In this document: positions 33,381 through 45,834 of the stretch, in pieces | Numbering within the stretch: position 1 is the first letter of the stretch | Layout of the letters: every line of letters begins with the position of its first letter | Virus record (IMG/VR): IMGVR_UViG_3300035181_000357 | Span: 146,612-210,611 of that record | Strand: one strand, 5' to 3' | DNA: 64,000 bases | Notes under the pieces: model-generated | Told to the model about the DNA's origin: nothing | What the model saw: the letters and a program-made list of their open reading frames with translations, nothing else | Database searches by the model: none | Translations under genes and position numbers: made by a program

Positions 33381-33635
33381 ATGTTCCATGGAAGTACCAG
33401 GAGTGATTTTGCTCTGAGTATGATTCAGGCTCGAGAGATGAACGTGGATCCTGAGATCATGCGATTGCTCGAAGATTTCGAAGCTGCGTACGAACGAGCT
33501 TTCAAGTTTGCGATCGAACTCAAGAAACATAAGAATTTTGAAGACATCGGTGAACTACTCCGGCTTGAACTTTTCGGAGACAAAGAAGCTATCGATGATC
33601 TCTATAAAGAAATCAAAAACCGAAAGAGGGTGTAG
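33381..33635 (+). CDS. Hypothetical protein
   Basis: 84 aa, GAGG SD. Confidence 0.6.
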   Translation: MFHGSTRSDFALSMIQAREMNVDPEIMRLLEDFEAAYERAFKFAIELKKHKNFEDIGELLRLELFGDKEAIDDLYKEIKNRKRV

Positions 33636-33636
33636 T

Positions 33637-34131
33637 TTGAAGAAGTCGCATAAGGTCATCATCCTGGCTGGTATCCCTGGTTCTGGAAAATCCACCTATA
33701 TTGAAGGTCTGATGAAGACTTTCAGTGAAGACATCTCGGTATCTATCGTGTCTGCCGATCACTATTTCATCAAGTACGGTACGTACAAGTATGTGGCACA
33801 TGATATCCCACATGCTCACAAGCAGTGTCAGAACAGGTTCTCTGACGCTCTGGACATGGACGTTGACGTTATCTTTGTAGACAACACCAACATCCTGAGT
33901 AAGCATCGCAAGCCATACGTCCAGGAGGCTCTGGATTGTGGCTATGAGGTTGAGATTCATGCTCTTCCTGCAGATGTCGAGGCTAGTGCAAGTAGGAACA
34001 TTCACGGTGTGGACCTGGATGTCTGTCAGCGAATGTTCGATTCTTTCGATCTGGAGTTTGGAACTATCTACGACCATAAGCGTCAGAAGATTGGGACTAT
34101 CACCAAGGAACAGGTAGGCTTGAGTGGCTAA
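33637..34131 (+). CDS. P-loop polynucleotide-kinase-like protein (AAA_33 type)
   Basis: GIPGSGKST, VSADHYF, VDNTN, RNIHGV. TTG start inferred. Confidence 0.8.
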   Translation: MKKSHKVIILAGIPGSGKSTYIEGLMKTFSEDISVSIVSADHYFIKYGTYKYVAHDIPHAHKQCQNRFSDALDMDVDVIFVDNTNILSKHRKPYVQEALDCGYEVEIHALPADVEASASRNIHGVDLDVCQRMFDSFDLEFGTIYDHKRQKIGTITKEQVGLSG

Positions 34132-34519
34132 ACAGCTATCATGTGGTGTCCTGGTTACACACAAGAATTCACTTCTTCTATGTCATGTAACTGGGACTTA
34201 CAATCGTTGGGATATTCCTAAAGGAATGCCTAATGATGGAGAAGATCACGTAGCTGCTGCTGTTCGAGAACTCAACGAAGAAACAGGGATTGTACTCGGT
34301 GTTAACTACAGAGAGTTGGGTTACACCGAGTACACCAAGACGAAGGATTTGTTCCTTCTCTACCATGAAGGTCTGTACGAAGTATCGGATATGACCTGTT
34401 TGTCGTTCTTTGAAGATGATCGTCCAGAGATGGATGGTTTTAGGTATTTTGATTTTAATGAAATTGTTGGCCACGTCACACCTAATCTGTATAAGGTATT
34501 GACTAAGTTCTTAGGGTGA
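34124..34519 (+). CDS. Nudix hydrolase
   Basis: WDIPKG-x5-E-x7-RELNEETGI. Confidence 0.9.
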   Translation: MAKQLSCGVLVTHKNSLLLCHVTGTYNRWDIPKGMPNDGEDHVAAAVRELNEETGIVLGVNYRELGYTEYTKTKDLFLLYHEGLYEVSDMTCLSFFEDDRPEMDGFRYFDFNEIVGHVTPNLYKVLTKFLG

Positions 34520-34522
34520 GTT

Positions 34523-35614
34523 ATGGAAAGAAAGCTAGTAACTATTAGAGAGATCGCTGCAGTGAATCCTATCCCCGATGCAGATGCCATCGAGGTGGTA
34601 ACTGTAGATGGATGGAAAGTGGTCTCCAAGAAAAATGAGTTCAAGCCAGGAGATCTCTGCCTATACTTCGAGATCGACAGCTTCCTACCTATCAAGCCAG
34701 AGTATGAGTTTCTGCGTAAGAGTAGCTACAAGAAGGTCATCGATGGTACGGAAGGATTCAGACTCAAGACCGTAAAACTGCGTGGTCAGATCAGCCAAGG
34801 TCTGGTTATGCCTATCTCAGAAGATATTCTGAAGACTCTGGCTCCAGTAGCTAGTTCGGATCTCAGGACTCTTCTGGACCAAGATCTCACCGAGTTGTTT
34901 GGTGTGACCAAGTGGGAGCCACCTCTGTCTGCCTGTCTTTCTGGGTTGGTTAAGGGTAACTTCCCATCACATACTCCGAAGTCTGGCCAGGAGCGTATCC
35001 AGAATCTGAAATACTTCTTCGAACTCTATAAAGATGAAGAGTTCGAGATGAGTCTGAAACTCGATGGAAGTTCATGCACTATGTATTTGGATCGAGAGGA
35101 TGTCTTTGGAGTCTGTTCACGTAATCTGGATCTGAAACCAGACGAGAGCAATAGCTTCTGGAAACAAGCCTATATTCATGGTGTTGAAGACAGACTCAAG
35201 ATAATTCATTCTGTATCTGGGTTGAATCTCAGTATCCAAGCTGAATTGGTTGGGGAAGGAATTCAGGAGAACCACGAGAAGATCAAGGGCCAAGATCTGT
35301 ATGTCTTCAATATCTGGGACCAACACCTCGGACGATCCTTGACCCCATCTGAACGACATGCTACACTGGATGCTCTAAACGATCTCCAGGTCTTAGGTTC
35401 CAAGCCACTTAAACATGTCCCTGTAATTGGGTATGAGAAGGTCTTCACCAAGTATCAGACACTAGAAGCTCTCTTTGAATTCGTGGAAAGCCTAGCTGGG
35501 ATGAATCCTGGTGTAATCCTCGAAGGCGTAGTGTTCAAGAGTGTAAGACCTATAAATGGTAGCATTGTAAGCTTTAAGATCGTCAGCAATAAGTACCTTC
35601 TTTCCAAGAAATAA
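34523..35614 (+). CDS. RNA ligase, Rnl2-like (DRB0094 type) with N-terminal OB domain
   Basis: IPDADAIE N-terminus, KLDGSS (motif I), CSRN, QAELVG, FNI, EGVVFK, FKIVSNKYLL. Confidence 0.88.
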   Translation: MERKLVTIREIAAVNPIPDADAIEVVTVDGWKVVSKKNEFKPGDLCLYFEIDSFLPIKPEYEFLRKSSYKKVIDGTEGFRLKTVKLRGQISQGLVMPISEDILKTLAPVASSDLRTLLDQDLTELFGVTKWEPPLSACLSGLVKGNFPSHTPKSGQERIQNLKYFFELYKDEEFEMSLKLDGSSCTMYLDREDVFGVCSRNLDLKPDESNSFWKQAYIHGVEDRLKIIHSVSGLNLSIQAELVGEGIQENHEKIKGQDLYVFNIWDQHLGRSLTPSERHATLDALNDLQVLGSKPLKHVPVIGYEKVFTKYQTLEALFEFVESLAGMNPGVILEGVVFKSVRPINGSIVSFKIVSNKYLLSKK

Positions 35615-35617
35615 GAA

Positions 35618-35647
35618 TTGTCTGATTTACGAATTATTAAGTAACCT
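35618..35647 (+). promoter_or_regulatory. Early-type promoter ahead of the tRNA array
   Basis: TTGTCT-N18-TAACCT. Confidence 0.65.
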
Positions 35648-35985
35648 AATAATGCCCGACGAAGTTTGCCCTGAAACCAAGTTAGAAATTTCTTGTTCAG
35701 AGCCTGGTTGGTTGGGTAATAAGTGAAGTGAAGCGGCTGAGGCCACCCTGCTCTCTGAAAAATCAATAACTTAATGGTATCGAACGCATCCGAGATTCAG
35801 GTCTCCGATGCTGAGATGAAACCACTACCTTTCCTGAATCTTAGAAATAAGGCTGTCGTGAGACTGCCTGTTTCCGTATGATTGCAGGAGGTTCCAACAA
35901 AATGTGGTCGCAGTTTATGGATGAAACTGCAGATATCTAGTATATGCCTGGTTCTCGATGATCCTATAAAATCGAAAACGAATTT

Positions 35986-36101
35986 GATCCCATAGCTCAG
36001 TTGGACAGAGCAACAGCCTTATCGCACTCCTGACCAGGTGGGTTTGGAACTGCATGGCTCTAAGCTGTAGGTCGCTGGTTCGAGCCCAGCTGGGATCACC
36101 A
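35986..36101 (+). tRNA. tRNA (probably Arg-UCU) with 39-nt insert in anticodon loop
   Basis: All four stems and CCA intact; removing 36021-36059 gives loop CT-TCT-AA; A20 present. Confidence 0.8.
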
Positions 36102-36589
36102 AATTGGTTTCTGGATAGTGTGGCAATGCTGATACTGTTGGTTAGACCTGATACCAACAAAATACCGCTTCTAAGTAGTTGTAGCGGGTAGTCGGATAAC
36201 TACTAGACTCCGACATGTTAACGCTGTTGAAGAGTCCATAACACTTGGTAGCATTACCTAAGTGGCGCGGAGTTTGGACACTGTTAGCTAAACCGCCTAA
36301 TGCTAACAAATACATCTTGGGGAATACTCTCCAGTTCATAATGAAAGATGGTAGTAGGATAGAAACGGGCTAACTCCTACATGTTAACGCTGTTGAGTCT
36401 ATCTTGGTGGGCATCGCTCCCACCAAGATAGACTGTTTTACCTCCTGTCTGAATCGCCCTGATCTCGTGGTACCTGAACTTTATGTCCATCTATATCCTG
36501 CAAATGAACTGTAGACATGGCTACCATCAGGGTTTCGAGACTCAGATCATAGGTATAGAATACTGTATTCAGTGGAGTACCACGATCCT
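36102..36589 (+). ncRNA. Structured non-coding block A (tandem motif, long hairpins)
   Basis: No credible ORF; many helices, including a perfect 15-bp hairpin at 36396-36432. Confidence 0.55.
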
Positions 36590-36664
36590 GTGGCCTTAGC
36601 TCAACGGTAGAGCATCGCCCTTTTAAGGCGAGGGTTGTGGGTTCGAGTCCCACAGGCCACACCA
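36590..36664 (+). tRNA. tRNA-Lys(UUU)
   Basis: Canonical cloverleaf, TCGCC-CTTTTAA-GGCGA, CCA. Confidence 0.95.
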
Positions 36665-37030
36665 TCCGAGGTGGGTTAAGCGTCACTGTGATGGCAGTAC
36701 GGATACCCACAGCATAAACTGCATGATGCTGGTCTTTACCTCCCGATAGTAGAATCTCGAAAGAGACTACTATTATACCCGACAAACCATTCCACTACTG
36801 ACATAGTGGAAACATAAATCGGAGCCGTGTCAGCGGTAATGCGGAACATGAACTATTTGTTGCGATAGTCGTGAGTTCGCCGGGAGTTATTAAATCCCCA
36901 TGTGATGGCTCGTATTAGAGCGAAGGATGCGTAAGCACCCAACAGGCTGAAGATAACACAGCGTATCATATGTTTTTGTTTTAGGAGAGCCCTGTCAGAA
37001 CTCTTCGGAGGAGGGTTAGACTCCCTATTA
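36665..37030 (+). ncRNA. Structured non-coding block B
   Basis: Helices capped by GAAA, GTAA and TTCG tetraloops. Confidence 0.6.
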
Positions 37031-37032
37031 AT

Positions 37033-37108
37033 AGCCCTATAGCTCAGCGGTCAGAGCTGACGGCTCATAACCGTCTGGTCCTAGGTTCGAACCCTAGTGG
37101 GGCTACCA
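37033..37108 (+). tRNA. tRNA(CAU), Ile2/Met elongator type
   Basis: GACGG-CTCATAA-CCGTC, CCA. Confidence 0.9.
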
Positions 37109-37109
37109 A

Positions 37110-37568
37110 ATCGTTTACTAGTTCGATTCTAATAAAAACTAGTCGAGGGGGATGGGTGAAGAATGCTGGTCTCAGGATAGAGACTATTCCCATCGGGTGA
37201 GACCTTATCCAATCTCTTCCTGCAGGAGCCGCGTAAAAAAGTCAAAAGAACCTTGGTGCTACACTATGCGCGAGTTATTGATAAAATCAATAGCGTCTCC
37301 TTTATGGATAGCGGTAGGAATTCGCTGCAAAATCCAAGGCTACCCTACTTAGGCATGCGGTAGGGTAAATTTCTCGAAATCTCAGGTTTCGTTGAACTAC
37401 GAAGTAACTGTACCGTAGTGAGGAATCTGTGACAGCGACATGGGTCGGGCCATGGCTGGCGACACCAGCTAAAAAGATGTTCCTGTGGGAAGGGTAACGT
37501 ATACTTTCTTCAGAAGACGTGCCAGTCCGGCTGGTGTCCAGCATGTATCTACCTCTACTGGACTTAAA
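37110..37568 (+). ncRNA. Structured non-coding block C
   Basis: Dense helices and alternative pairings, no credible ORF. Confidence 0.55.
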
Positions 37569-37653
37569 GCTCCCATGGCGGAATTGGTAGACGCTACGGA
37601 CTTAAAATCCGTCGCCTATGGGCATCCCGGTTCGACTCCGGGTGGGAGCACCA
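37569..37653 (+). tRNA. tRNA-Leu(UAA)
   Basis: Class II cloverleaf, CCA. Confidence 0.95.
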
Positions 37654-37832
37654 AACTGTTCTCTGTTACAGTCTTAACAGAGTGGTCCAGGCGGGGAAAT
37701 TCCCCATCCGTAGTCCCTATGCTACAGAAGGTCATAGGGTGGTGGAGGCGGTGTGACCTCGGTCATGCTTCTAGGTGTCGGGTGCGTAAGCAACATGACT
37801 CGAGTCAGATCCTCTAAGTCTGACATATTTCT

Positions 37833-38170
37833 GGGCCTGACAAGGTTTCGACAGGTTGTTAGCTTGGGATTGCGGTGCAGGGACTGGTTGATCAGCAGGC
37901 CAGTATAAAAGCAGATCAAACTTTAATTGCCGAGCCACAGCTCGCACTAGCAGCTTAAACACTGCTACGAGGAACCGCGAGAGGACAGTAGCGGGGAATC
38001 GTCACCACCGTCCTAGTTTCTACTAAGAGTTCGGGTAAGTAGGAGCGAAACTACGCGATCAAACGATAGTAGGCTGTCAGTCGCCGACCTATCGAGACCA
38101 GACTGACTAACCCTGTGAATGACTTCAATACAACTCTTCTTGGACGTGGGTTCGAATCCCACCAGGTCCA
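37833..38170 (+). ncRNA. ssrA: tmRNA, tag AEPQLALAA
   Basis: GGGCCTG..GGTTTCGAC 5' end, T arm, G3.U70 pair, tag ORF 37929-37958; CCA not encoded. Confidence 0.93.
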
Positions 38171-38676
38171 CATCGGTAGACTTCCTAGTTCTTACGGAGA
38201 ATAGGAACATGGAAGTCTACCATACAACCCTCTAAGATAATGGATGGACAAGAGGTAGGAAATTCCCTAGCGATAGGGATTAAGATCGGCGAGTGCCGAT
38301 ATACGGAGGTAGTTATGGCTACTGAACCAGAGGACAACGACGGTCTACTCGGGACCGAGCGTGAATCAGATGAAGAAGGTTGTCCAGATTATGACAAGGA
38401 CGACGACGAGTAACACTGTACCATAATACCGGGGATGGGGACGACAGGCCCATACAAAGCAGATCCATAGTGTAAAAACTATGGGTGATGAAAGTCTGCC
38501 ATGTCAGTTGATTCTCTAGACTGACAAACCTTAAGTTGGATGCAAACGGAAGACGACTCGCCATCGACCCCAGGCACATGGGGAACCACGGCCTTTCCCA
38601 GATAGCGTAGTGGCCCTACGACGATGCGTGGAAGGTGGGATTATTCCCTTAAAAGCACTGTGTCATCCAACTACTT
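38171..38676 (+). ncRNA. Structured non-coding block E
   Basis: Many helices, including long-range GTTGGATG/CATCCAAC. Confidence 0.55.
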
Positions 38677-38754
38677 GATCCCATCGTCTAAACTGGTTTA
38701 GGACAGTAGCCTCTCAAGCTGCAGATCCGGGTTCGAATCCCGGTGGGACCACCA
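38677..38754 (+). tRNA. tRNA-Glu(CUC)
   Basis: GTAGC-CTCTCAA-GCTGC, CCA. Confidence 0.9.
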
Positions 38755-38756
38755 AG

Positions 38757-38843
38757 GCCGAGGTGCCAGAGTGATTGAATGGGCAGGTTTTGTAATCCTG
38801 TAGAGAAATCTCGTCATGGGTTTGAATCCCATCCTCGGCTCCA
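38757..38843 (+). tRNA. tRNA-Thr(UGU) with long variable arm
   Basis: Loop TT-TGT-AA, G1-C72/C2-G71, U73, V-arm GAG-AAAT-CTC. Confidence 0.75.
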
Positions 38844-39011
38844 ATCAAAATTTATTTCATAAAAGTTATCTTCCAGAGATTGTAGTTCGTAATTAATGAA
38901 TTATGTGGTCATGGCCACGCGAATTCCCTTTGACAATTTCATAGAGATCAAGCACACGAGCTCTGCTGTAGAGTCTAACGATTCTGGCACACATGCCGTG
39001 TGTATTTATTA

Positions 39012-39096
39012 GGTAGGGTGGACAATGGTCGTCAAGCGGCTTTGAATACCGTCGCTCCGAGAGGAGTTGCAGGTTCGAATCCTGTCCCTACCGCCA
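39012..39096 (+). tRNA. tRNA-Ser(UGA)
   Basis: Long V-arm, G73, CCA. Confidence 0.9.
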
Positions 39097-39105
39097 ATCT
39101 TTAAT

Positions 39106-39183
39106 GGCCCAGTACGCTAATTGGCAGATGCGGTAAGTTTCAAAAACTTGTGGTTGTCGGTTCGAATCCGACTTGGGCTACCA
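39106..39183 (+). tRNA. tRNA-Leu(CAA), short variable loop
   Basis: TAAGT-TTCAAAA-ACTTG, A73, CCA. Confidence 0.8.
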
Positions 39184-39185
39184 AT

Positions 39186-39274
39186 GGAAGATCGGCACAG
39201 TTGGAGAGGTGCGCCAGTTTGCTAAACTGGTAGATGTAACAGTCTAGAGGGTTCGATTCCCTTATCTTCCGCCA
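39186..39274 (+). tRNA. tRNA-Ser(GCU)
   Basis: CCAGT-TTGCTAA-ACTGG, long V-arm, G73. Confidence 0.93.
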
Positions 39275-39467
39275 AAGTCGTCGCTCGCAAAGCGGAGAGA
39301 GGTAAGTAAGACAGATTAATGGTCTAGAACATCCTGTCAGAGAATACCTTGTAGGTTCAAATCCTACCTTGACAACAATACGCAACGCCATAGAAAAGCC
39401 TTCATCTTAATAGGGATGGGGGGGAAACCCTCGCTGGCTTTTCACCACTTTCGTTGCATTCTTATTA

Positions 39468-39541
39468 CGGTCACTGGCGCAGCCTGGTAGCGCACCTGCT
39501 TTGGGAGCAGGGGGTCGAGTGTTCGAATCACTCGTGGCCGA
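39468..39541 (+). tRNA. tRNA-Pro(UGG), no encoded CCA
   Basis: CTGCT-TTGGGAG region, C1-G72, canonical D arm. Confidence 0.88.
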
Positions 39542-39580
39542 CATCGTGATCTAGACTTAGGTTTAGATCACACAATATCT

Positions 39581-39657
39581 CGGGGTGAAAGTGAGCCTGG
39601 TACACGGTCTGGTTTGGAACCAGAAGATCGTCGGTTCAAATCCGACCTCCCCGACCA
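39581..39657 (+). tRNA. tRNA-Pro(UGG), second divergent copy
   Basis: TCTGG-TTTGGAA-CCAGA, CCA. Confidence 0.85.
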
Positions 39658-39692
39658 ATATCAAACTTTATAATTATATGTAGAGGACTATC

Positions 39693-40049
39693 ATGTTCAA
39701 AGCTAAACTACTAAAGACTGCATCAAGTCCACAATTGACTCTGGCTCAACAAGTCTATGCTCAACATAAGGCAGAGATAGATCCTAAGATTTTCAAGGCT
39801 GCTGACTATGTAGTTGATAATGCTATCGATCTAGATTCTGAAACTGCAGATAATCATCTATTTGGTGATGCTATATTTGAGCCATGGTTTGAAGCCAGCC
39901 CAGAATATCTCAGTATGACAGAAGAATCTGGGAACGAAGATGACGAGACCGATTATATTGGTGGTGTCTGGGAACAAGTTCTGTCTACAAATCCAAAGTA
40001 TAAAGATGTCGTAGCTAAATTTGCTGACATCAGAATCAATGGATATTAA
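39693..40049 (+). CDS. Acidic hypothetical protein starting MFKAKLLKTAS, inserted in the tRNA array
   Basis: AGAGG SD and late-type motif upstream. Confidence 0.75.
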   Translation: MFKAKLLKTASSPQLTLAQQVYAQHKAEIDPKIFKAADYVVDNAIDLDSETADNHLFGDAIFEPWFEASPEYLSMTEESGNEDDETDYIGGVWEQVLSTNPKYKDVVAKFADIRINGY

Positions 40050-40055
40050 TATCAT

Positions 40056-40134
40056 GGAGTGCTAGGGGAGTCAGGCCGTCCCCAGTTGCTTGTCACGCAA
40101 CAGATCACGGGTTCGAATCCCGTGCACTCCGCCA
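40056..40134 (+). tRNA. tRNA-Asp(GUC)
   Basis: GTTGC-TTGTCAC-GCAAC, G73, CCA. Confidence 0.92.
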
Positions 40135-40254
40135 TTCTCTCTAGAAATAGAGGATCATGAGTTGGGTAGAATCCACGTCTGAGGGACGTTAGGTGTCTGC
40201 TGTGCTGCAGCGAGAAACCCCACTAGCAGACCCTGTCTCATGATCAAATATCAT

Positions 40255-40331
40255 GCTCCGTATGCTGAAGTTGTCGAGGCGTTGGTCTGCAAAACCAATC
40301 TTAGCCAGTTCAAGTCTGGCACGGAGCTCCA
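40255..40331 (+). tRNA. tRNA-Cys(GCA)
   Basis: TTGGT-CTGCAAA-ACCAA, U73, CCA. Confidence 0.93.
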
Positions 40332-40360
40332 AATTCGTAATGCCCTTTAGAAGCTTTCAT

Positions 40361-40453
40361 CCACTATAAGGACGTTATCGGAGGTTCGAATCCTCCTCCC
40401 GGAACCAATATCTTATTTTTCATTCCGGGATAGCTTAGTGGCCTAAAGCACGT
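40361..40453 (+). ncRNA. Circularly permuted tRNA-like gene (3' half before 5' half)
   Basis: T arm, TCCCGGA-A-CCA, 16-nt linker, TCCGGGA, D arm, CGT. Confidence 0.75.
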
Positions 40454-40493
40454 AAAAGAGCTTTTTTACTATTTTCATTGCGAAGCCTATTAT

Positions 40494-40579
40494 GGTCCAG
40501 GAGTCCAACGGTTGAGACAGCACGCTGTTAACGTGCCGCTGTAAAAGCACATAGGGTTCAACTCCCTACTGGATCGCCA
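40494..40579 (+). tRNA. tRNA-Asn(GUU) with long variable arm
   Basis: GCACG-CTGTTAA-CGTGC, V-arm GCT-GTAAA-AGC, G73. Confidence 0.85.
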
Positions 40580-40630
40580 TCGGGTAATGATCCCAAGAGA
40601 TATATCAAAGAAGCAAATGAATTTATCCAT

Positions 40631-40718
40631 GCATCAGCGGCAGAGTTGGAGGGCTGCAACGGTCTGTAAAACCGTCGGGTTGATCCCCTAGTAGGTTCGA
40701 GTCCTACCTGATGCACCA
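40631..40718 (+). tRNA. tRNA-Tyr(GUA)
   Basis: ACGGT-CTGTAAA-ACCGT, long V-arm. Confidence 0.93.
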
Positions 40719-40720
40719 AA

Positions 40721-40795
40721 GTCGATAGTGGACGAGGGACGTCCGGGAGTCTTCTAAACTCCATTCTCCGGGTTCGAGTCCTGGTATCGACACCA
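40721..40795 (+). tRNA. tRNA-Arg(UCU), intact
   Basis: GGAGT-CTTCTAA-ACTCC, CCA. Confidence 0.88.
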
Positions 40796-40799
40796 ATTT

Positions 40800-40891
40800 C
40801 CCGGTGTGATGTACGGTTGCATAGGTGGCTTTATACCCCACTCGCGCCAGATTAGCGCCTTGTTAGGGTTCGACTCCCTACGCCGGGACCA
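40800..40891 (+). tRNA. Atypical class II tRNA, anticodon ambiguous (UUA possible)
   Basis: Acceptor, D, V and T arms and CCA present; anticodon arm GGTGG-CTTTATACC-CCACT. Confidence 0.6.
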
Positions 40892-40969
40892 ATTCTTGAT
40901 AACGCCTTCGAATCAGGTTTCATCCATTAAATGAAAAGCCTGTTCATCCTGTTCTTCGTTATCATCCAC

Positions 40970-41043
40970 TGCGCTGTCGTCTAGTGATAAGGCAAGAGAC
41001 TTTGACTCTCTGAACGTAGGTTTGATTCCTGCCAGCGTAACCA
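40970..41043 (+). tRNA. tRNA-Gln(UUG)
   Basis: U1-A72, AGAGA-CTTTGAC-TCTCT. Confidence 0.9.
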
Positions 41044-41165
41044 TCGATTAACTTTCTTTTGAGAGTTCATCAAAATATCATCATCAGTATACTTCCAACC
41101 TGTTGGTAAAATAGAAGGGCTGTTGATGTTAGCACGACTGTTCGACTCAGCCTCGTGCGAAATAT

Positions 41166-41240
41166 GGGCTATAGGAATTAAAGGTTGTTCGCATGACTGA
41201 AAATCATGAGGAGGCGGTTCGATACCGTCATAGCCCACCA
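41166..41240 (+). tRNA. tRNA-Phe(GAA)
   Basis: CATGA-CTGAAAA-TCATG, CCA. Confidence 0.88.
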
Positions 41241-41242
41241 AC

Positions 41243-41322
41243 GTCCGGGTACGCAAATCTGGCAAAGCGACTATCCTCAGAAGGTAGTGACTCTGTGGGT
41301 TCGACTCCCACCTCGGACACCA
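41243..41322 (+). tRNA. tRNA-Leu(CAG), short variable loop
   Basis: CTATC-CTCAGAA-GGTAG, CCA. Confidence 0.85.
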
Positions 41323-41403
41323 ATCAATGCAGATGTACGCTATCTGGTATCTCGGAAATCCTGAAAAGGTTGTGTTTTTAGCACACCGTAACAGGCTTCC
41401 ATC

Positions 41404-41490
41404 GCGGATATGGTGGAACTTGGTAGACACGCAGCTTTGAGATGGCTGTCCCGAAAGGGGGTGGGGGTTCGAGTCCCCCTATCCGCACCA
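41404..41490 (+). tRNA. tRNA-Leu(GAG)
   Basis: Class II cloverleaf, CCA. Confidence 0.92.
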
Positions 41491-41588
41491 ATGTTAGGGG
41501 TTAATGCGGTAGCTGACGCAAGAAACAGTCGCTTCCCCAACATGGAGAGAATCTTGCGTGACTCTCCTCACCTTGTGCGATAAAATAT

Positions 41589-41662
41589 GGGTCCTTAGTT
41601 AAGCGGGATAACTTCTGGTTTGCATCCAGACATCGGGAGTTCGATTCTCCCAGGATCCACCA
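41589..41662 (+). tRNA. tRNA-Ala(UGC)
   Basis: G3.U70, TCTGG-TTTGCAT-CCAGA. Confidence 0.92.
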
Positions 41663-41665
41663 TAT

Positions 41666-41749
41666 GGGGCTGAAGTGACTTTGGTAAGCACACCGTTAGG
41701 GCGTACGCCGAACGGAGGTTATGGGTTCGATTCCCGTCATGTTCCACCA
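41666..41749 (+). tRNA. Ala-identity tRNA-like RNA with masked anticodon (6-nt insert)
   Basis: G3.U70, A73-CCA, D and T arms; arm CCGTT-AGGGCGT-ACGCCG-AACGG. Confidence 0.65.
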
Positions 41750-41755
41750 ATCAAT

Positions 41756-41841
41756 GCATCGGACGCAGAACTGGTTGCTGCCCCAGACTCTTAATCTGGT
41801 TCCTAACGGACTTGGGGGTTCGAATCCCCTCCGATGCACCA
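41756..41841 (+). tRNA. tRNA-Lys(CUU) with long variable arm
   Basis: CCAGA-CTCTTAA-TCTGG, V-arm TCC-TAAC-GGA, A73. Confidence 0.85.
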
Positions 41842-41847
41842 AATATC

Positions 41848-41924
41848 AAGGAGTTGGCCGAGGCTGGCATAGGCGATGGTTTGTGGTACCATACACAGGG
41901 GTTCGAATCCCCTACTCCTGACCA
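41848..41924 (+). tRNA. tRNA-His(GUG), A73 and no G-1
   Basis: ATGGT-TTGTGGT-ACCAT, CCA. Confidence 0.8.
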
Positions 41925-41978
41925 ATTTTTAGGATGTTTTAAACTTCCTGATGCTACTATAGTGAATATGGAGTTTAA

Positions 41979-42977
41979 ATGTCCCATGATAATTATGTCG
42001 TAAAGGTTGGAAACGATTATGTAGAAAGAAGTGCCTTTGTAATCGCTGATTCTACAGATCCTCTTGCTGTTGCTCGTGTTACTAACACTGCTCCTGGAGC
42101 TAGTGATTATGGCGTAGTAGTCAGAATGATCGGTACTGTCTCTGTCACTGGTGGTGGCGGTGGTGCTGTCTATGGACCTTCGTCCCTAGGTGTGGTATTA
42201 TCAAATCCTCCAGTAGCAATTGGTGGAGTTGATGCTGGAGGCTTGTTAAGAGTTATCAGGACTGACGCTGCTGGATATGGGCTAAACATGATTACCAATG
42301 GTACGCAGTTCATGCCCACCATGGATGCTGCGGCTCGTCGTGGTTACATGACTCACACAGATGGTACGAACTCCATGCCAACTGGTGATGCTGTTGCTCG
42401 TGGTATTTATCATCGTATTACGGATGGTGTTACACAAGTGGCCGTTAAAGCAGCTTCGACTGCTGCTGTCGCTGCTGATCCTGCCTTGGTAGTAGCGCTG
42501 TCTCCAAACAATAACACTGCTGCCCTAGCCTGGTTTGAGAAGATCACTGATGGAACAAATACTGCAGCTGTTAAAGCTTCTACTACTGTAGCTGCTATTA
42601 CTGATCCTGCCTTGGTTACGACTCTGAGTCCTAACCTTCCTGTTCCAACGATGAGCACTATCTCATCTGCTGCGACAACGAATGCTACATCTGTTAAAGC
42701 ATCTGCTGGAACCGTATTCAATATCGTATGTTCTAATACTGGTGCTGCTGCTGCGTATGTCAAGTTCTACAACAAGGCTTCTGCTCCTACAGTCGGTACA
42801 GATGTTCCTGTATTTACATTGACCATTCCAGCTTCTGGCTCAGTAATAATCCCTGCATCGTTGATTGGTATTAGATTTGCTACTGGTATTGCTCTGGCAA
42901 TTACCAATTTAGCAGCTGATTCTGATACAACGGCTGTAGTCTTAAATCAAGTCAAAGTAATGACATCCTATATTTAA
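41979..42977 (+). CDS. Ala/Thr-rich repeat protein, probable fibre/decoration protein, inside the tRNA array
   Basis: Repeats ITDG..AVKA(A/S)T..A..DPALV..LSPN and MPT.DA.AR.G. Confidence 0.7.
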   Translation: MSHDNYVVKVGNDYVERSAFVIADSTDPLAVARVTNTAPGASDYGVVVRMIGTVSVTGGGGGAVYGPSSLGVVLSNPPVAIGGVDAGGLLRVIRTDAAGYGLNMITNGTQFMPTMDAAARRGYMTHTDGTNSMPTGDAVARGIYHRITDGVTQVAVKAASTAAVAADPALVVALSPNNNTAALAWFEKITDGTNTAAVKASTTVAAITDPALVTTLSPNLPVPTMSTISSAATTNATSVKASAGTVFNIVCSNTGAAAAYVKFYNKASAPTVGTDVPVFTLTIPASGSVIIPASLIGIRFATGIALAITNLAADSDTTAVVLNQVKVMTSYI

Positions 42978-42995
42978 TAGGATGGTGGTACTACT

Positions 42996-43069
42996 GCGGG
43001 TGTAGCTCAACGGTAGAGCTCCTGGTTTCCACCCAGATGACGAGGGTTCAATTCCCTTCACCCGCTCCA
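42996..43069 (+). tRNA. tRNA-Gly(UCC)
   Basis: GCGGGTG acceptor, U73, CCA. Confidence 0.95.
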
Positions 43070-43080
43070 TTTTTCTCCAT

Positions 43081-43158
43081 AGAGGGTAACGCGAAGTGGT
43101 TGAGCGGCCAGCCTTTCAAGCTGTCGATTAGCGGGTTCAAATCCCGTACCCTTTACCA
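43081..43158 (+). tRNA. tRNA-Glu(UUC)
   Basis: Loop CT-TTC-AA, CCA. Confidence 0.88.
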
Positions 43159-43186
43159 AAGATTCTAAATTTTCGTTGAATTTTAT

Positions 43187-43263
43187 GTCCCCATAGCTGA
43201 GTCTGGCCTTAGCACCGTTCTACGAAAGCGGAGACACTGGTTCAAATCCAGTTGGGGATACCA
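43187..43263 (+). tRNA. tRNA-Arg(ACG)
   Basis: CCGTT-CTACGAA-AGCGG. Confidence 0.9.
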
Positions 43264-43266
43264 ATT

Positions 43267-43341
43267 GCCAGCAAACCCGAATGGTGAGGGGGATGTCTCA
43301 TAAGCATCTTGTCAAGGGTTCGAATCCCTTTGTTGGCACCA
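43267..43341 (+). tRNA. tRNA(CAU) Met/Ile2
   Basis: GATGT-CTCATAA-GCATC, CCA. Confidence 0.88.
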
Positions 43342-43346
43342 CCAAT

Positions 43347-43434
43347 GGAAGATCGCCGAAGTCGGAGCGTCGGAACAGCCTGGAAAGTTGTGGCCGTCAA
43401 AGGCCAGAGAGTTCGAATCTCTCATCTTCCGCCA
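43347..43434 (+). tRNA. tRNA-Ser(GGA)
   Basis: Long V-arm, G73. Confidence 0.92.
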
Positions 43435-43561
43435 TTGAAGAAGAAGAATAAGAATAAGAAGGGTGACCAGAGCGTGATTAATCTGGTTTCATAAAGGTGA
43501 GCTTCCTACATCTTATAAAGATGCACTGCTCGTTACTGTCAGTTCTCAGAAATAAGTTTAT

Positions 43562-43635
43562 TCCAGATTCATTCAAAGGTAGGATGGGAGTTTCTGAAGC
43601 TCTTAATGATGGTTCGAATCCATCATCTGGATCCA
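43562..43635 (+). tRNA. tRNA-Gln(CUG)
   Basis: U1-A72, loop TT-CTG-AA. Confidence 0.85.
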
Positions 43636-43669
43636 TCTAGTGTGTAGCATACATCTATATTTAATCTAT

Positions 43670-43743
43670 TGACCTGTAACTCAATGGCAGAGTAATCGAC
43701 CGATAATCGATAAATGGCAGTTCGAATCTGCCCAGGTCAACCA
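43670..43743 (+). tRNA. tRNA-Ile(GAU) with C33
   Basis: ATCGA-CCGATAA-TCGAT. Confidence 0.88.
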
Positions 43744-43777
43744 ATCCTCTTAGATTTAAATACCAAATAGGAGTAGT

Positions 43778-43918
43778 ATGCAGTTACTAGGTGTGATATC
43801 CATAGTAATCTTCAGCTTATGGTTAGTCTTCAGAAAGAAGAAATGCCATGACTGTGCTAATTCCTTCTGTAAGAATGGGTCTGTGGTGCTAGCGGGAACA
43901 CGCTTGAATGGCATTTAA
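43778..43918 (+). CDS. 46-aa membrane/Cys peptide overlapping tRNA-Ala(GGC)
   Basis: TAGGAG SD; MQLLGVISIVIFSLWLVFRKKKCHDCANSFCKNG... Confidence 0.45.
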   Translation: MQLLGVISIVIFSLWLVFRKKKCHDCANSFCKNGSVVLAGTRLNGI

Positions 43919-43951
43919 GAGTTAAGGGTTCGACTCCCTTCAGATCCACCA
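43877..43951 (+). tRNA. tRNA-Ala(GGC)
   Basis: G3.U70, A32-U38, CCA. Confidence 0.88.
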
Positions 43952-43954
43952 ATA

Positions 43955-44023
43955 CATCCGATATCAAACGGTCAGATACCAGACTTTTAATCTGGAGAGG
44001 CTTGACTCCCACCGGGTGCCCCA
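43955..44023 (+). pseudogene. Degenerate tRNA-Lys(UUU)
   Basis: CCAGA-CTTTTAA-TCTGG intact but T arm eroded. Confidence 0.55.
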
Positions 44024-44039
44024 GTTCTTGTTGGTTCAT

Positions 44040-44114
44040 GGCCCTTTAGCTCAGTGGTAGAGCGGCTTCTTTACACGGAGAAGGTCGGCGGTTCAATCCC
44101 GTCAAGGGCTACCA
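44040..44114 (+). tRNA. tRNA-Val(UAC)
   Basis: Loop TT-TAC-AC, canonical D and T arms. Confidence 0.9.
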
Positions 44115-44118
44115 AAAT

Positions 44119-44191
44119 CGGGAGATAGCTTAAGTGGTAGAGCGGTCTTTGCGCAAGATAGATGGTGCTTCGAGAGCATCTCTCCCGGCCA
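44119..44191 (+). tRNA. tRNA-Arg(GCG), rare isoacceptor
   Basis: Loop TT-GCG-CA, G73, CCA. Confidence 0.7.
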
Positions 44192-44195
44192 ATAT

Positions 44196-44270
44196 GCCTC
44201 ATTAACTCAGCGGAAGAGTTCTGGTCTTCGAAACCAGCAGTCGGCGGTTCGAATCCGTCATGAGGCACCA
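44196..44270 (+). tRNA. tRNA-Arg(UCG)
   Basis: CTGGT-CTTCGAA-ACCAG. Confidence 0.92.
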
Positions 44271-44306
44271 ACTTCGATGTATTATAATGTAAAGTATCTT
44301 TGAAAT

Positions 44307-44385
44307 TGCGGGTGGACTGGTCGGCAATCAGGCGATGTCTCATAAGCATTGTAAAACGGAGGTTCAACTCCCCGACCCGCTACCA
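44307..44385 (+). tRNA. Atypical tRNA-Met(CAU) with 1:72 mismatch and bulged T stem
   Basis: Loop CT-CAT-AA, ACCA end. Confidence 0.65.
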
Positions 44386-44444
44386 AATTTGCAGTACCCT
44401 CTCTTCCAGCTTTATACAGCCGCTAGCTGGACGGCTTTAGCCCC

Positions 44445-45212
44445 ATGTGGGTAGGAGATAGCATGATGCATTATAACAACTCAATCGTAACGATTCTAGA
44501 TGCAAAGACTAAGAATCAATTCCGGGAATATGATCATATAAGACAAGGAAACTTGAGTCAGGTAACTGTCCGAGTTCCTTTTGGATCTGAATATTTATTC
44601 CGTTTTAAATTTCCTGATCAGAAACGTCGTCGGCTTGAGATATCAATCGATGGTACTCTGGTTACAGACAATCTCATCATCACTGATGGTAGTGAACTAG
44701 AGAGATTTGTTGAATCTGATAAAAGATTCAAGTTCGTGGAAGCATCGAATGATGCCGTATCCGATCCAGGTTCTCCATCAAATGGAAAGATCGAGATAAA
44801 GCTCTTTGAAGAATCCCTTCCAATCACCCATCTGACTAAGACCTGGAATGACAACGTTATCTATCGGCCAATCAAAGGTTATCCTGGACCAGGATGTGAG
44901 ATCACATGTTCCTCCTATTCCTCAGATATGAACTTGAATGTCTATAATACTAGTAGCTGCAATGCTTCAAACGTTCTTAGAAGTATGGCATCTAATGACA
45001 TCGGAGCTACGGTAGAAGGATCTAGATCTAAGCAAGAATTTGGATCAACTACATGGCAAGGTGATTCTTTCTGTAGTACTTTCATCTTCTGGATGAAGGG
45101 TAAGCAAAATGATACAAAAGAAGATAAGTTCTGTAGCTCTTGTGGTAACAGTATTCGTAGTGCTGCAGATCGTTTCTGTTCAAAGTGTGGCAACAAAATT
45201 TCTAGAACTTAG
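44445..45212 (+). CDS. Hypothetical protein with C-terminal double Zn ribbon
   Basis: FCSSCG ... FCSKCG; start uncertain. Confidence 0.7.
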   Translation: MWVGDSMMHYNNSIVTILDAKTKNQFREYDHIRQGNLSQVTVRVPFGSEYLFRFKFPDQKRRRLEISIDGTLVTDNLIITDGSELERFVESDKRFKFVEASNDAVSDPGSPSNGKIEIKLFEESLPITHLTKTWNDNVIYRPIKGYPGPGCEITCSSYSSDMNLNVYNTSSCNASNVLRSMASNDIGATVEGSRSKQEFGSTTWQGDSFCSTFIFWMKGKQNDTKEDKFCSSCGNSIRSAADRFCSKCGNKISRT

Positions 45213-45248
45213 AAACACTTAATCGTAAGTGTTATCTAAGAGTGTCGT

Positions 45249-45629
45249 ATGGATTTTGAGTATGGAAGCCTTGATAGGGACATTGATATGGAGCATAGGA
45301 ATCTATGCTCCATATTAGATGATATCACAGAAGCTATCAAGACTCAAGGCCTAATAGAGCCTCTTTTAGAACAGCTATTACACGATAGTGTTATTCATTT
45401 CAAAAATGAAGAAGCTAAAATGCAATTCTATAAGTTCCCTCGTGAAGAATATGAAAGACACAAAGAAGCTCACATTAAACTTATCTCTGTATTCGAAGAG
45501 ATGTTAGAACGCTACACAAATTCTCCTGTGAGGAATTATATCTATTACAGGTTTGTGGATTCATGGCTCAAAAATCATTTCAAGGGCATGGATTCAAAAT
45601 TCGCTGACTTCTTGAATAATAAGAAGTAA
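45249..45629 (+). CDS. Bacteriohemerythrin-like protein
   Basis: IDMEH, HFKNEE, HKEAH, WLKNHFKGMD. Confidence 0.88.
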   Translation: MDFEYGSLDRDIDMEHRNLCSILDDITEAIKTQGLIEPLLEQLLHDSVIHFKNEEAKMQFYKFPREEYERHKEAHIKLISVFEEMLERYTNSPVRNYIYYRFVDSWLKNHFKGMDSKFADFLNNKK

Positions 45630-45641
45630 TAACTAGTTACT

Positions 45642-45717
45642 GGTTCCGAAGCTCAATGGTAGAGCAAGGAGTCTCTAAAACTTCTGGCTGTGGATTCGAA
45701 TTCCACCGGAATCACCA
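45642..45717 (+). tRNA. Amber suppressor tRNA (CUA)
   Basis: AGGAGT-CTCTAAA-ACTTCT, normal D and T loops, A73-CCA. Confidence 0.88.
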
Positions 45718-45834
45718 AATCAAGGGAGAATAGTATGACTGGAAGATCACACCTCTAGGTCCTAGCTCGCTCGCCATGACCTTATAGTATATGTCTGTTG
45801 CTAACTAAGCCTACATATTCTAAAGGAGAAAACA

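What the first reader, a model, noticed from the sequence alone, without database searches (positions are those of the whole stretch)
36665..37030. Ornate ~365-nt non-coding RNA candidate between tRNA-Lys and tRNA-Ile2
Seen: no credible ORF; nested helices GAGGT/ACCTC and GTGGGT/ACCCAC, CAGCAT/ATGCTG, GATAGTAG-TCTC-GAAA-GAGA-CTACTATT (36745-36774), TTCCACT/AGTGGAA, GAGCC/GGCTC, TGC-GTAA-GCA, CTC-TTCG-GAG. GNRA and UUCG tetraloops mark structured RNA. Known: large ncRNAs such as GOLLD and ROOL occur in phage tRNA regions; I cannot assign this one to either.
Basis: partly seen in the sequence, partly recalled or inferred. Interest (0 to 1): 0.66.

Follow-up and report, generated by a model that had tools for sequence, protein, structure and literature searches.

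The report
Hairpin-rich spacer in phage tRNA array
A 368-base gene-free stretch between two tRNA genes of a giant phage folds into a chain of unusually stable hairpins and is probably cut out as its own RNA when the tRNAs are processed. It matches no known RNA family and is missing from the phage's nearest assembled relatives, so a specific job for it is unproven.

Summary
It is also the only place in the 210.6-kb phage record with three stem-closed cGNRAg/cUUCGg tetraloop hairpins in 368 nt (0.065 expected, Poisson 4e-5).

The fold energy alone is not exceptional. Windows of this genome average z -0.97, and 4 of 40 reach -3.97 or lower.

It is not GOLLD, ROOL or any other Rfam family, even with the laxest filters.

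It is lineage-specific. Syntenic relatives (RNA ligase 63-67% identical) conserve the non-coding elements on both sides, with compensatory pair changes, but have nothing like this stretch. In one relative, tRNA-Lys is followed within 51 nt by the element that here follows tRNA-CAT.

Only very close relatives, seen as short contigs in public runs, share its first 34 nt and a 58-nt core. One of them replaces 80 nt, including the showpiece GAAA hairpin, with 18 other letters.

Strain variants mostly fall in loops or turn an A.C mismatch into G.U.

Best reading: a young, modular, structured spacer RNA released by tRNA end-processing, analogous to T4 RNAC/RNAD. Function is unknown, and an inert leftover is nearly as likely.

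The parts
36590..36664 (+). tRNA-Lys(UUU) with encoded CCA. Its 3' end defines the 5' boundary of the spacer RNA.
   Evidence: ARAGORN; Rfam tRNA, 76.1 bits.
36665..37032 (+). The candidate: a 368-nt non-coding spacer that folds into seven local stem-loop domains.
   Evidence: No ORF. MFE -121.1 kcal/mol, z -4.24. Tetraloop-hairpin density is unique in the genome. No Rfam match.
36668..36742 (+). Domain 1, a three-way junction. The closing helix is GAGGU/ACCUC, the second helix is UGGGU/ACCCA and encloses a small hairpin, and the third is CAGCAU/AUGCUG.
   Evidence: MFE equals centroid when folded alone, -26.2 kcal/mol. Positions 36665-36698 are kept in a close relative, with 4 differences in 92 nt that include the tRNA. 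Positions 36699-36778 are replaced there by 18 letters, which can again pair with the 5' GAGGUG (pairing read by eye).
36745..36774 (+).
   Evidence: It is absent from the relative in run X9, so it is dispensable.
36779..36837 (+). Domains 3 and 4, the conserved core. CCGA/UCGG closes a 7x7 internal loop and an 8-pair hairpin. A 5-pair hairpin follows at 36824-36837.
   Evidence: Fold. Positions 36779-36836 are kept at about 86-88% in relatives in a wastewater DNA run and a freshwater RNA run. The common variant 36815 T>C lies in the internal loop.
36841..36880 (+). Domain 5, an interrupted stem-loop (GCGGA/UUCGC closing helix).
   Evidence: Fold. There is no comparative evidence.
36899..36972 (+). 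Domain 6, a multi-branch domain closed by a 9-pair stem. It holds three hairpins, including the cGUAAg hairpin 36925-36940 and the hairpin 36946-36962.
   Evidence: MFE equals centroid, -23.9 kcal/mol. A strain variant in runs X3/X4 has 36927 A>G together with 36938 C>T, which turns an A.C mismatch into G.U. It also has +AA in the GUAA loop, 36952 G>T, and 1- and 2-nt deletions in the 9-nt loop. No Watson-Crick pair is hit.
36973..36982 (+). U-rich tract (UUUUUGUUUU) directly after the domain 6 stem. It may be a weak terminator or an RNase E entry site.
   Evidence: Read from the sequence. The consensus terminator scan did not call it.
36984..37024 (+). Domain 7, the 3' hairpin GGAG..CCCU..CUC-UUCG-GAG..AGGG..CUCC with a cUUCGg tetraloop. 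It ends 8 nt before the next tRNA.
   Evidence: The variant 37013 G>A in one low-depth contig would break a C-G pair.
37033..37108 (+). tRNA with anticodon CAT (tRNA-Ile2-like). RNase P cleavage at its 5' end would define the 3' end of the spacer RNA.
   Evidence: ARAGORN; Rfam, 65.7 bits. It is 79% identical to KVP40 tRNA-Ile-2. It is 77% identical to the tRNA-Ile(TAT) of relative L004, which sits elsewhere in that array.

Best explanation
The stretch is an internal spacer of the polycistronic tRNA transcript of a jumbo phage (41 tRNAs plus a tmRNA, all on the + strand). It folds on its own into a string of seven stem-loop domains.

It lies exactly between the encoded CCA of tRNA-Lys(UUU) and the first base of tRNA-CAT. 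The host's ordinary tRNA processing would therefore release it as a discrete RNA of about 368 nt, with no need for its own promoter or terminator: RNase P cuts at 37032/37033, and 3' trimming or RNase E/Z acts at 36664/36665.

Its stable tetraloop hairpins, especially the 3' one, would slow exonucleases. It probably persists as a stable spacer-derived RNA, the same kind of object as RNAC and RNAD of the T4 tRNA region.

It is evolutionarily young and modular. It is present only in this phage lineage, it is linked to the relocated tRNA-CAT, and whole hairpin modules are swapped between close relatives.

Shown: it is non-coding, the hairpins and the tetraloop excess are real, it belongs to no known family, its phylogenetic range is narrow, and its variation is modular.
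Inferred: co-transcription, release by tRNA processing, stability, and any activity in trans.
For: - It sits inside a same-strand tRNA array, flush against two intact CCA-encoding tRNAs.
- No ORF.
- z -4.24.
- Three stem-closed cGNRAg/cUUCGg hairpins against 0.065 expected, unique in the 210.6 kb and specific to the + strand.
- Domains 1, 2, 3+4 and 6 give the same MFE and centroid when folded alone.
- A contig in a freshwater metatranscriptome (X9) joins tRNA-Lys to a related copy of the element. Its word depth is 11.4, against 17.5 for the same relative's tmRNA and 2.9 for the upstream non-coding element.
- In the strain variant in X3/X4, six changes within 36927-36956 all avoid Watson-Crick pairs. 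Two of them lie opposite each other and convert A.C to G.U.
- In the X9 relative, 80 nt are replaced by 18 letters that can restore pairing with the 5' strand of the domain 1 closing helix (pairing read by eye).
Against: - No trace in the nearest assembled relatives L004, L005 and L006/L013, by nhmmer or by covariance models of the core and of domain 6. Those relatives do conserve the elements on both sides.
- Most tRNAs of the array are only 2-10 nt apart, so no spacer is needed for processing.
- The fold z-score lies within the tail of this genome's own background.
- The largest hairpin is dispensable, and one variant (37013 G>A) breaks a predicted pair.
- The A.C to G.U change is equally compatible with the opposite strand.
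- The only expression evidence is contig depth in one RNA library. That cannot show ends or strand, or exclude DNA carry-over.
Confidence: 0.45

Rival explanations
1. It is inert leftover DNA. A rearrangement, or a homing-endonuclease-driven cassette insertion, brought tRNA-CAT next to tRNA-Lys, and the 368 nt are the decayed remains of what came with it (an endonuclease gene or a small gene). The hairpins are incidental, and the RNA is degraded as an ordinary spacer.
For: - The stretch plus tRNA-CAT behaves as one indel relative to L004. There, tRNA-Lys (12886-12960) is followed after 51 nt by the homologue of window 37109-37568.
- In L004, L013 and L005 the orthologous tRNA-Ile is flanked by a NUMOD3/GIY-YIG endonuclease gene and a 128-144-aa gene.
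- These arrays are visibly reshuffled between relatives.
- The minus strand 36739-36852 weakly resembles the N-terminus of that 128-144-aa protein family (tblastn E 0.056; profile 7.9 bits, E 0.4, rank 2 of 2464 fragments).
- Some coding windows of this genome fold as well by z-score.
Against: - The protein similarity is at noise level. Unrelated fragments score 7.1 and 6.7 bits.
- The common variant 36815 T>C would change the family-conserved Tyr to Cys in that frame.
- The endonuclease gene gives no significant match (E 1.8).
- Decay does not predict the genome-unique excess of canonical tetraloop hairpins, or variants that avoid paired bases.
Confidence: 0.35
2. It is a partner RNA of the phage's RNA-repair and quality-control cassette: a Y-RNA-like ligand of the Ro60-like protein, or a substrate or guide for the kinase/ligase system encoded just upstream.
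For: - A 506-aa protein at 26303-27823 weakly matches Ro60 over nearly its full length (PDB 9nen, E 0.038; Pfam vWA_Ro60, E 0.0019).
- That gene is syntenic in L004 and L006.
- A P-loop kinase, a NUDIX protein and an RNA ligase lie at 33508-35614.
Against: - No Y_RNA or YrlA-type match in Rfam at E up to 10.
- No long terminal stem was recognised that joins the two ends with a bulged Ro-binding helix.
- The element is 9 kb from the Ro60-like gene.
- Relatives that keep the Ro60-like gene lack the element. The conserved element at 35615-35950 is a better candidate for such a partner.
Confidence: 0.07
3. It is a divergent member of GOLLD, ROOL or another described large ornate RNA family.
For: Only context: GOLLD and ROOL are often found next to tRNA genes in phages (PMC5737381; bioRxiv 10.1101/2024.12.08.627333).
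Against: No match to any of the 4227 Rfam models at E up to 10, with the most permissive filters. At 368 nt it is well short of ROOL and GOLLD (about 580 and 800 nt from my recollection; not checked in the papers here). No homologue in GenBank phages.
Confidence: 0.03
4. It encodes a small protein, possibly read with TAG as a sense codon, since the phage carries a tRNA with anticodon CUA.
For: A tRNA(CUA) lies at 45642-45717. With TAG=Q, frames of 104-158 codons open across the stretch.
Against: - Those longer frames run through the flanking tRNA genes.
- Under the standard code the longest internal ORFs are 37-38 codons, on the strand opposite to the array.
- Flanking genes read well with code 11.
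- Indels of 1, 2 and 4 nt segregate among strains.
- The same sequence in a JGI record has no gene called here.
Confidence: 0.03

Closest known systems
T4 RNAC and RNAD (small stable RNAs of the T4 tRNA gene cluster)
   Same: Non-coding RNAs embedded in a phage tRNA cluster and transcribed with the tRNAs. Their function is still unknown (PMC3014915, PMC9697503).
   Different: No sequence similarity: the GenBank phage search found only tRNA matches. This element is about 368 nt, longer than I recall the T4 species being (not checked in the papers here). Expression and ends are shown for T4 but not here.
GOLLD and ROOL (large ornate RNAs, often next to tRNAs in phages and prophages)
   Same: Phage context beside tRNA genes, many helices, and a function unknown apart from self-assembly seen by cryo-EM (10.1101/2024.12.08.627333, PMC5737381).
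   Different: No covariance-model match. It is about half their size or less, and it is a chain of local hairpins rather than a large nested architecture. It has no broad phylogenetic distribution.
Spacer-derived RNAs of bacterial tRNA operons (for example the E. coli 3' external transcribed spacer of leuZ, which acts as an sRNA sponge; from my own knowledge, not checked here)
   Same: An RNA defined only by the processing of neighbouring tRNAs that survives as a by-product with a possible trans role.
   Different: Those are short (tens of nt) and act by base pairing. No above-chance complementarity to the rest of this phage genome was found.
Bacterial and phage Y RNAs (YrlA-type) bound by Ro60
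   Same: A structured ncRNA in a genome that also encodes a Ro60-like protein and RNA-repair enzymes (PMC4201824, PMC12135203).
   Different: No Rfam match, no tRNA-like module, not adjacent to the Ro60-like gene, and absent from relatives that keep that gene.

Membership tests
GOLLD (Rfam) | Match to the family covariance model (sequence plus structure). | tested here: not met
   No hit at E up to 10 with permissive filters on 36660-37035, nor.
GOLLD (Rfam) | Size of roughly 800 nt with a large multi-domain nested fold. | tested here: not met
   368 nt between two intact tRNAs, in seven local domains. The GOLLD size figure is from my own recollection.
GOLLD / ROOL | Frequent location beside tRNA genes in phage or prophage DNA. 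| tested here: met
   It lies inside a 41-tRNA array of a 210.6-kb viral record.
ROOL (Rfam) | Match to the family covariance model. | tested here: not met
   No hit at E up to 10.
tRNA, tmRNA or tRNA pseudogenes | Cloverleaf or T-arm remnants detectable by the tRNA and tmRNA models. | tested here: not met
   ARAGORN and the Rfam tRNA/tmRNA models hit the flanks only. Nothing inside 36665-37032 at E up to 10.
Y RNA (Y_RNA / YrlA-type) | Covariance-model match. | tested here: not met
   No Rfam hit.
Y RNA (Y_RNA / YrlA-type) | A terminal stem joining the two ends that carries the Ro60-binding bulged helix. | not tested
   The energy model can pair 36665-36671 with 37003-37009, but this competes with the UUCG hairpin. 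The Ro-binding motif itself was not searched for.
Y RNA (Y_RNA / YrlA-type) | Encoded next to a Ro60 gene. | tested here: inconclusive
   A Ro60-like gene exists at 26303-27823, but it lies 9 kb away, and relatives keep it without this element.
T4 RNAC/RNAD-type stable RNAs of phage tRNA clusters | Encoded within the tRNA cluster on the tRNA strand. | tested here: met
T4 RNAC/RNAD-type stable RNAs of phage tRNA clusters | Accumulates as a discrete stable RNA during infection. | not testable with these tools
   Only contigs of one RNA library were available, with depth 11.4 against 17.5 for tmRNA. No read ends and no strand information.
T4 RNAC/RNAD-type stable RNAs of phage tRNA clusters | Sequence homology to the T4 genes. 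| tested here: not met
   A blastn search of 36590-37110 against 50,697 GenBank phage records matched the tRNA parts only.
Conserved structured ncRNA (generic criterion) | Covariation in an alignment of independent homologues. | not testable with these tools
   No full-length homologue could be fetched. Only variant lists were available.

The most novel reading that the evidence does not exclude
This is a new, fast-evolving class of phage RNA that needs no promoter or terminator because the tRNA-processing enzymes cut it out. It is built from exchangeable hairpin modules around a small conserved core (36665-36698 and 36779-36836). It would act in trans, for example as a decoy or sponge for a host RNA-targeting defence, or as a cofactor of the phage's Ro60-like/kinase/ligase RNA-repair set. 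That would explain both the selection for nuclease-resistant tetraloop hairpins and the rapid turnover between close relatives.
Probability: 0.15. Interest if true: 0.65.

Novelty: new member of a known kind. Interest (0 to 1): 0.3.

Why it matters
If the spacer is a functional RNA, it would add a second, unrelated example to the half-century-old puzzle of T4 RNAC/RNAD: what are stable RNAs inside phage tRNA clusters for? It would also show that tRNA punctuation can serve jumbo phages as a general way to make defined non-coding RNAs.

If it is only a leftover, the case is a useful caution. Hairpin-rich, tetraloop-bearing sequence with z near -4 can be young and dispensable. In this locus, the conserved structured RNAs with covariation are the plainer-looking neighbours at 35615-35950 and 37109-37568.

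Tried and rejected
Searches for homologues of the stretch that found nothing useful:
- blastn against GenBank phages matched only the tRNAs.
- The phage's own genome has no second copy.
- IMG/VR pattern scans returned zero hits: the tRNA-Lys/5' junction (16), the core with a free hairpin (30), the upstream spacer (37), tmRNA (39), the 5' domain (60) and an invariant block of the upstream element (87).
- One JGI metagenome scan gave three chance 21-mers with no further similarity.
- Two GTDB genome scans returned zero.
- An exact look-up of the 115-codon antisense ORF found nothing on record.
- Homologues of the RNA ligase and of the 332-aa array protein gave relatives at 67% identity or less, or records of the same phage. 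None of the relatives carries the element.
- Single-sequence covariance models of the core and of domain 6 hit only themselves in 155 kb of relatives.

Ideas tested and dropped:
- Paralogue of the conserved flanking RNAs: no.
- Antisense target elsewhere in the phage genome: the longest complementary words (12 nt) equal the shuffle expectation.
- Pairing with the tRNA-Arg insertion: no better than shuffles.
- Relic of the 128-144-aa gene or of the endonuclease gene that flank the orthologous tRNA in relatives: scores are at noise level. This is kept only as part of a rival explanation.
- Apparent similarity of the first 20 nt and a GAUACCYA motif to the spacer after tRNA-Lys in L005: not above shuffles.
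- Sigma-70 promoter or canonical terminator inside the stretch: none on the + strand.

Two background z-score scripts timed out before a lighter one ran.

Full report
**Setting.** The window is the last 64 kb of a 210.6-kb IMG/VR viral record, estimated 69% complete, so it is a jumbo phage.
- From 36590 to 48034 the + strand carries 41 tRNA genes and a tmRNA at 37833-38171.
- Directly upstream lies an RNA-handling cassette:
  - a Ro60-like protein at 26303-27823 (Pfam vWA_Ro60, E 0.0019; PDB Ro60 9nen, E 0.038 over residues 78-456);
  - a P-loop kinase at 33508-34131;
  - a NUDIX protein at 34124-34519;
  - an RNA ligase at 34523-35614.
- The finding is the 368 nt between tRNA-Lys(UUU) (36590-36664) and a tRNA with anticodon CAT (37033-37108). 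That tRNA resembles phage tRNA-Ile2 (79% identity to the KVP40 gene so annotated).

**Observation.**
- No ORF above 38 codons lies inside the stretch. The longer frames, including those read with TAG as sense, run through the flanking tRNAs.
- The RNA folds to -121.1 kcal/mol, against -97.3 +/- 5.6 for dinucleotide shuffles (z -4.24, 0 of 100 as good).
- Folded piecewise, it is a chain of seven local domains. Four of them (domains 1, 2, 3+4 and 6) give identical MFE and centroid structures.
- The domains are D1 36668-36742, D2 36745-36774, D3 36779-36822, D4 36824-36837, D5 36841-36880, D6 36899-36972 and D7 36984-37024. A U-tract lies at 36973-36982.
'Nested' therefore overstates the architecture.

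**Is it more than chance?**
- The z-score alone is not decisive. Forty 368-nt windows of the same sequence average z -0.97 (sd 1.59), and four reach -3.97 or lower, some of them coding. The minus strand of the candidate gives -3.45.
- A second, independent measure is stronger. Hairpins with at least three pairs closing a cGNRAg or cUUCGg loop occur 37 times on the + strand of the whole 210.6 kb.
- The candidate has three such hairpins (36758, 36930, 37003), against 0.065 expected (Poisson 4e-5). It is the only place in the genome where a 368-nt window holds three.
- These loops are meaningful only on the + strand, the strand of the tRNAs.

**Known families.** No Rfam 15 family matches.
- This holds at gathering thresholds and at E up to 10 on 1.3 kb, 14 kb or the 376 bases alone.
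- GOLLD, ROOL, Y RNA, RNase P, group I introns, tmRNA and tRNA remnants are therefore all negative.
- GenBank phages match only the tRNA parts.

**Relatives.** Homologues of the RNA ligase led to syntenic contigs: L004 (67% identity), L005 (65%) and L006/L007 with their continuation L013/L014 (63%).
- They share the Ro60-like gene, the kinase, the NUDIX protein, the ligase, the tmRNA and many tRNAs in similar order.
- nhmmer finds no trace of the candidate in any of them.
- The non-coding stretch before the array (35615-35950) is found at E 1e-38, and the stretch after tRNA-CAT (37109-37568) at E 1.5e-23.
- Both flanking elements show compensatory pair changes: 18 of 50 predicted pairs in the downstream element and 11 of 92 in the upstream one.
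- In L004, tRNA-Lys(UUU) is followed after 51 nt by the homologue of 37109-37568. The tRNA most like the window's tRNA-CAT sits after the tmRNA, between a NUMOD3/GIY-YIG endonuclease gene and a 144-aa gene.
- The candidate plus tRNA-CAT therefore behaves as one indel or relocation.
- Covariance models of the core and of domain 6 hit nothing in 155 kb of relatives. Profiles of the two flanking elements do not hit the candidate.
- Pattern scans of IMG/VR, JGI metagenomes and GTDB genomes gave nothing beyond chance.

**Close relatives in sequencing runs.** The stretch is held nearly whole by sediment and microbial-mat runs, and in part by wastewater and freshwater runs. Laying four runs as contigs showed the following.
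- A 320-nt contig in a freshwater metatranscriptome (X9) covers 36607-36698 with 4 differences. It then carries 18 other letters in place of 36699-36778, then 36779-36836 with 8 differences, and then diverges.
- A wastewater DNA run (X5) holds 36465-36680 with 4 differences, and separately 36779-36836 with 7 differences.
- Very close relatives therefore keep the 5' 34 nt and a 58-nt core.
- The 18 replacement letters contain CACCUU, which can pair with the 5' GAGGUG. The closing helix of domain 1 may thus be kept by different sequence (my reading, not a tool result).
- A more abundant strain in the mat runs differs within 36927-36956 by three substitutions and three indels.
  - All six avoid Watson-Crick pairs.
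  - 36927 A>G and 36938 C>T face each other and turn an A.C mismatch into G.U.
  - The other four changes lie in the two hairpin loops.
- With 18 of 30 positions unpaired, six of six in unpaired positions has a probability of about 0.05. The opposed pair is an added coincidence.
- Against this, 37013 G>A in one low-depth contig breaks a pair in domain 7. The GUAA loop becomes a six-base loop in the variant.
- In the RNA library, the related contig has word depth 11.4, against 17.5 for the relative's tmRNA and 2.9 for its upstream element. This hints at expression, but contigs cannot show ends or strand, or exclude DNA.

**Alternative origins tested.**
- The minus strand 36739-36852 resembles the N-terminus of the 128-144-aa protein that neighbours the orthologous tRNA in relatives (tblastn E 0.056).
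- A three-member profile scores it only 7.9 bits (E 0.4). That is level with unrelated fragments.
- The common variant 36815 T>C would replace the conserved Tyr in that frame.
- The endonuclease gene gives E 1.8.
- No complementarity above chance links the stretch to the rest of the phage genome.

**Interpretation.** The most economical reading is a tRNA-punctuated spacer RNA.
- It is transcribed with the array and released by RNase P at its 3' end and by tRNA 3' processing at its 5' end. Hairpins capped with the most stable tetraloops would stabilise it.
- This is the kind of object known since the 1970s as RNAC and RNAD in the T4 tRNA region, whose roles are still unknown (PMC3014915, PMC9697503).
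- The tetraloop excess and the structure-sparing variants argue for some selection on the fold.
- The absence from relatives that keep everything around it, the dispensable hairpin and the ordinary z-score argue that any function is recent, lineage-specific or weak.
- I put 0.45 on a selected, stable spacer RNA, 0.35 on an inert leftover of rearrangement, and small weights on a Ro60/RNA-repair partner, a divergent known family, and a small ORF.

**Novelty and score.** It is not a member of any described family. It is a new instance of a known kind: spacer-embedded RNAs of phage tRNA clusters. Interest is modest (0.3). The more promising objects in this locus are listed under things noticed in passing: two conserved structured elements that flank it, and short insertions in tRNA anticodon loops next to an RNA-repair cassette.

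Noticed in passing
window 37109-37568 (best 37385-37565); L004 13012-13425; L006 12136-12329: The non-coding stretch between tRNA-CAT and tRNA-Leu(UAA) is conserved in relatives and always lies just 5' of tRNA-Leu(UAA). RNAalifold on three sequences gives 50 pairs, 18 of them with compensatory double changes. A hairpin near its 5' end also looks covarying in the pairwise alignment (ACUAGU/ACUAGU versus GUUGGU/ACCAAC, read by eye). No Rfam match. This is a better-supported novel structured RNA than the finding itself.
   Followed up: partly
window 35615-35950; L004 10596-10975; L006 10748-11195: A non-coding element of about 330 nt lies directly after the RNA ligase stop codon. It has long invariant blocks separated by variable hairpins (nhmmer E 1e-38; 92 predicted pairs, 11 compensatory). 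A relative's copy is present in an RNA library. No Rfam match. It may be the RNA partner of the ligase/Ro60-like cassette.
   Followed up: partly
window 35986-36102 (insertion 36021-36058, with one base of ambiguity); L005 5408-5527: tRNA-Arg(UCU) carries a 39-nt insertion in the anticodon loop, just 5' of the anticodon. The uninterrupted allele exists in L006, where the two halves are 100% identical, and as a joint 36019>36059 in DNA contigs of the same habitats. In L005 the tRNA-Lys(UUU) has a 40-nt insertion at a similar place with similar end motifs. This is far too short for a group I intron. It lies next to genes for a kinase, a NUDIX protein and an RNA ligase, which raises the possibility of protein-dependent tRNA splicing in a phage.
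   Followed up: partly
window 26303-27823 and 33508-35614: The phage has a Ro60-like protein (weak but near full-length match to Ro60 structures), a P-loop kinase, a NUDIX protein and an RNA ligase with a PHA02142 OB domain. Relatives also carry a metallophosphatase. The set is reminiscent of bacterial rsr/Y-RNA/rtcB repair operons.
   Followed up: partly
window 45642-45717: A tRNA with anticodon CUA (an amber suppressor, which ARAGORN calls Pyl) is present, although the neighbouring genes read well with the standard code.
   Followed up: no
window 36396-36434: A 16-pair perfect hairpin followed by GTTTTA (terminator-like) lies between tRNA-Arg and tRNA-Lys. Its loop carries indels between strains. 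A 24-nt direct repeat flanks the region (36207-36230 and 36373-36396).
   Followed up: no
window 37712-37773 and 38174-38230; L004 13978-14033 and 14535-14600: A 34-nt block upstream of the tmRNA, and a hairpin directly after it, are identical or nearly so between phages whose ligases are only 67% identical. A weak sub-threshold wcaG RNA hit overlaps 37654-37754 (22 bits, E 1.6).
   Followed up: no
L004 14575-15360, L006 9130-10020, L009 2479-2775, L013 646-1365 and 1848-2642: GIY-YIG/NUMOD3 homing-endonuclease genes are scattered through the tRNA arrays of relatives. One splits the RNA ligase gene in L006 and L007. The window's own array has lost or never had them at these sites.
   Followed up: no
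window 46611-47279: A pentapeptide-repeat protein gene sits inside the tRNA array. It has 16 tandem 15-nt units and a local GC content of 60%.
   Followed up: no
L005 5640-5675: The spacer after tRNA-Lys in relative L005 contains a T-arm-like GGTGGTTCGAATCCACA. It is probably a decayed tRNA.
   Followed up: no
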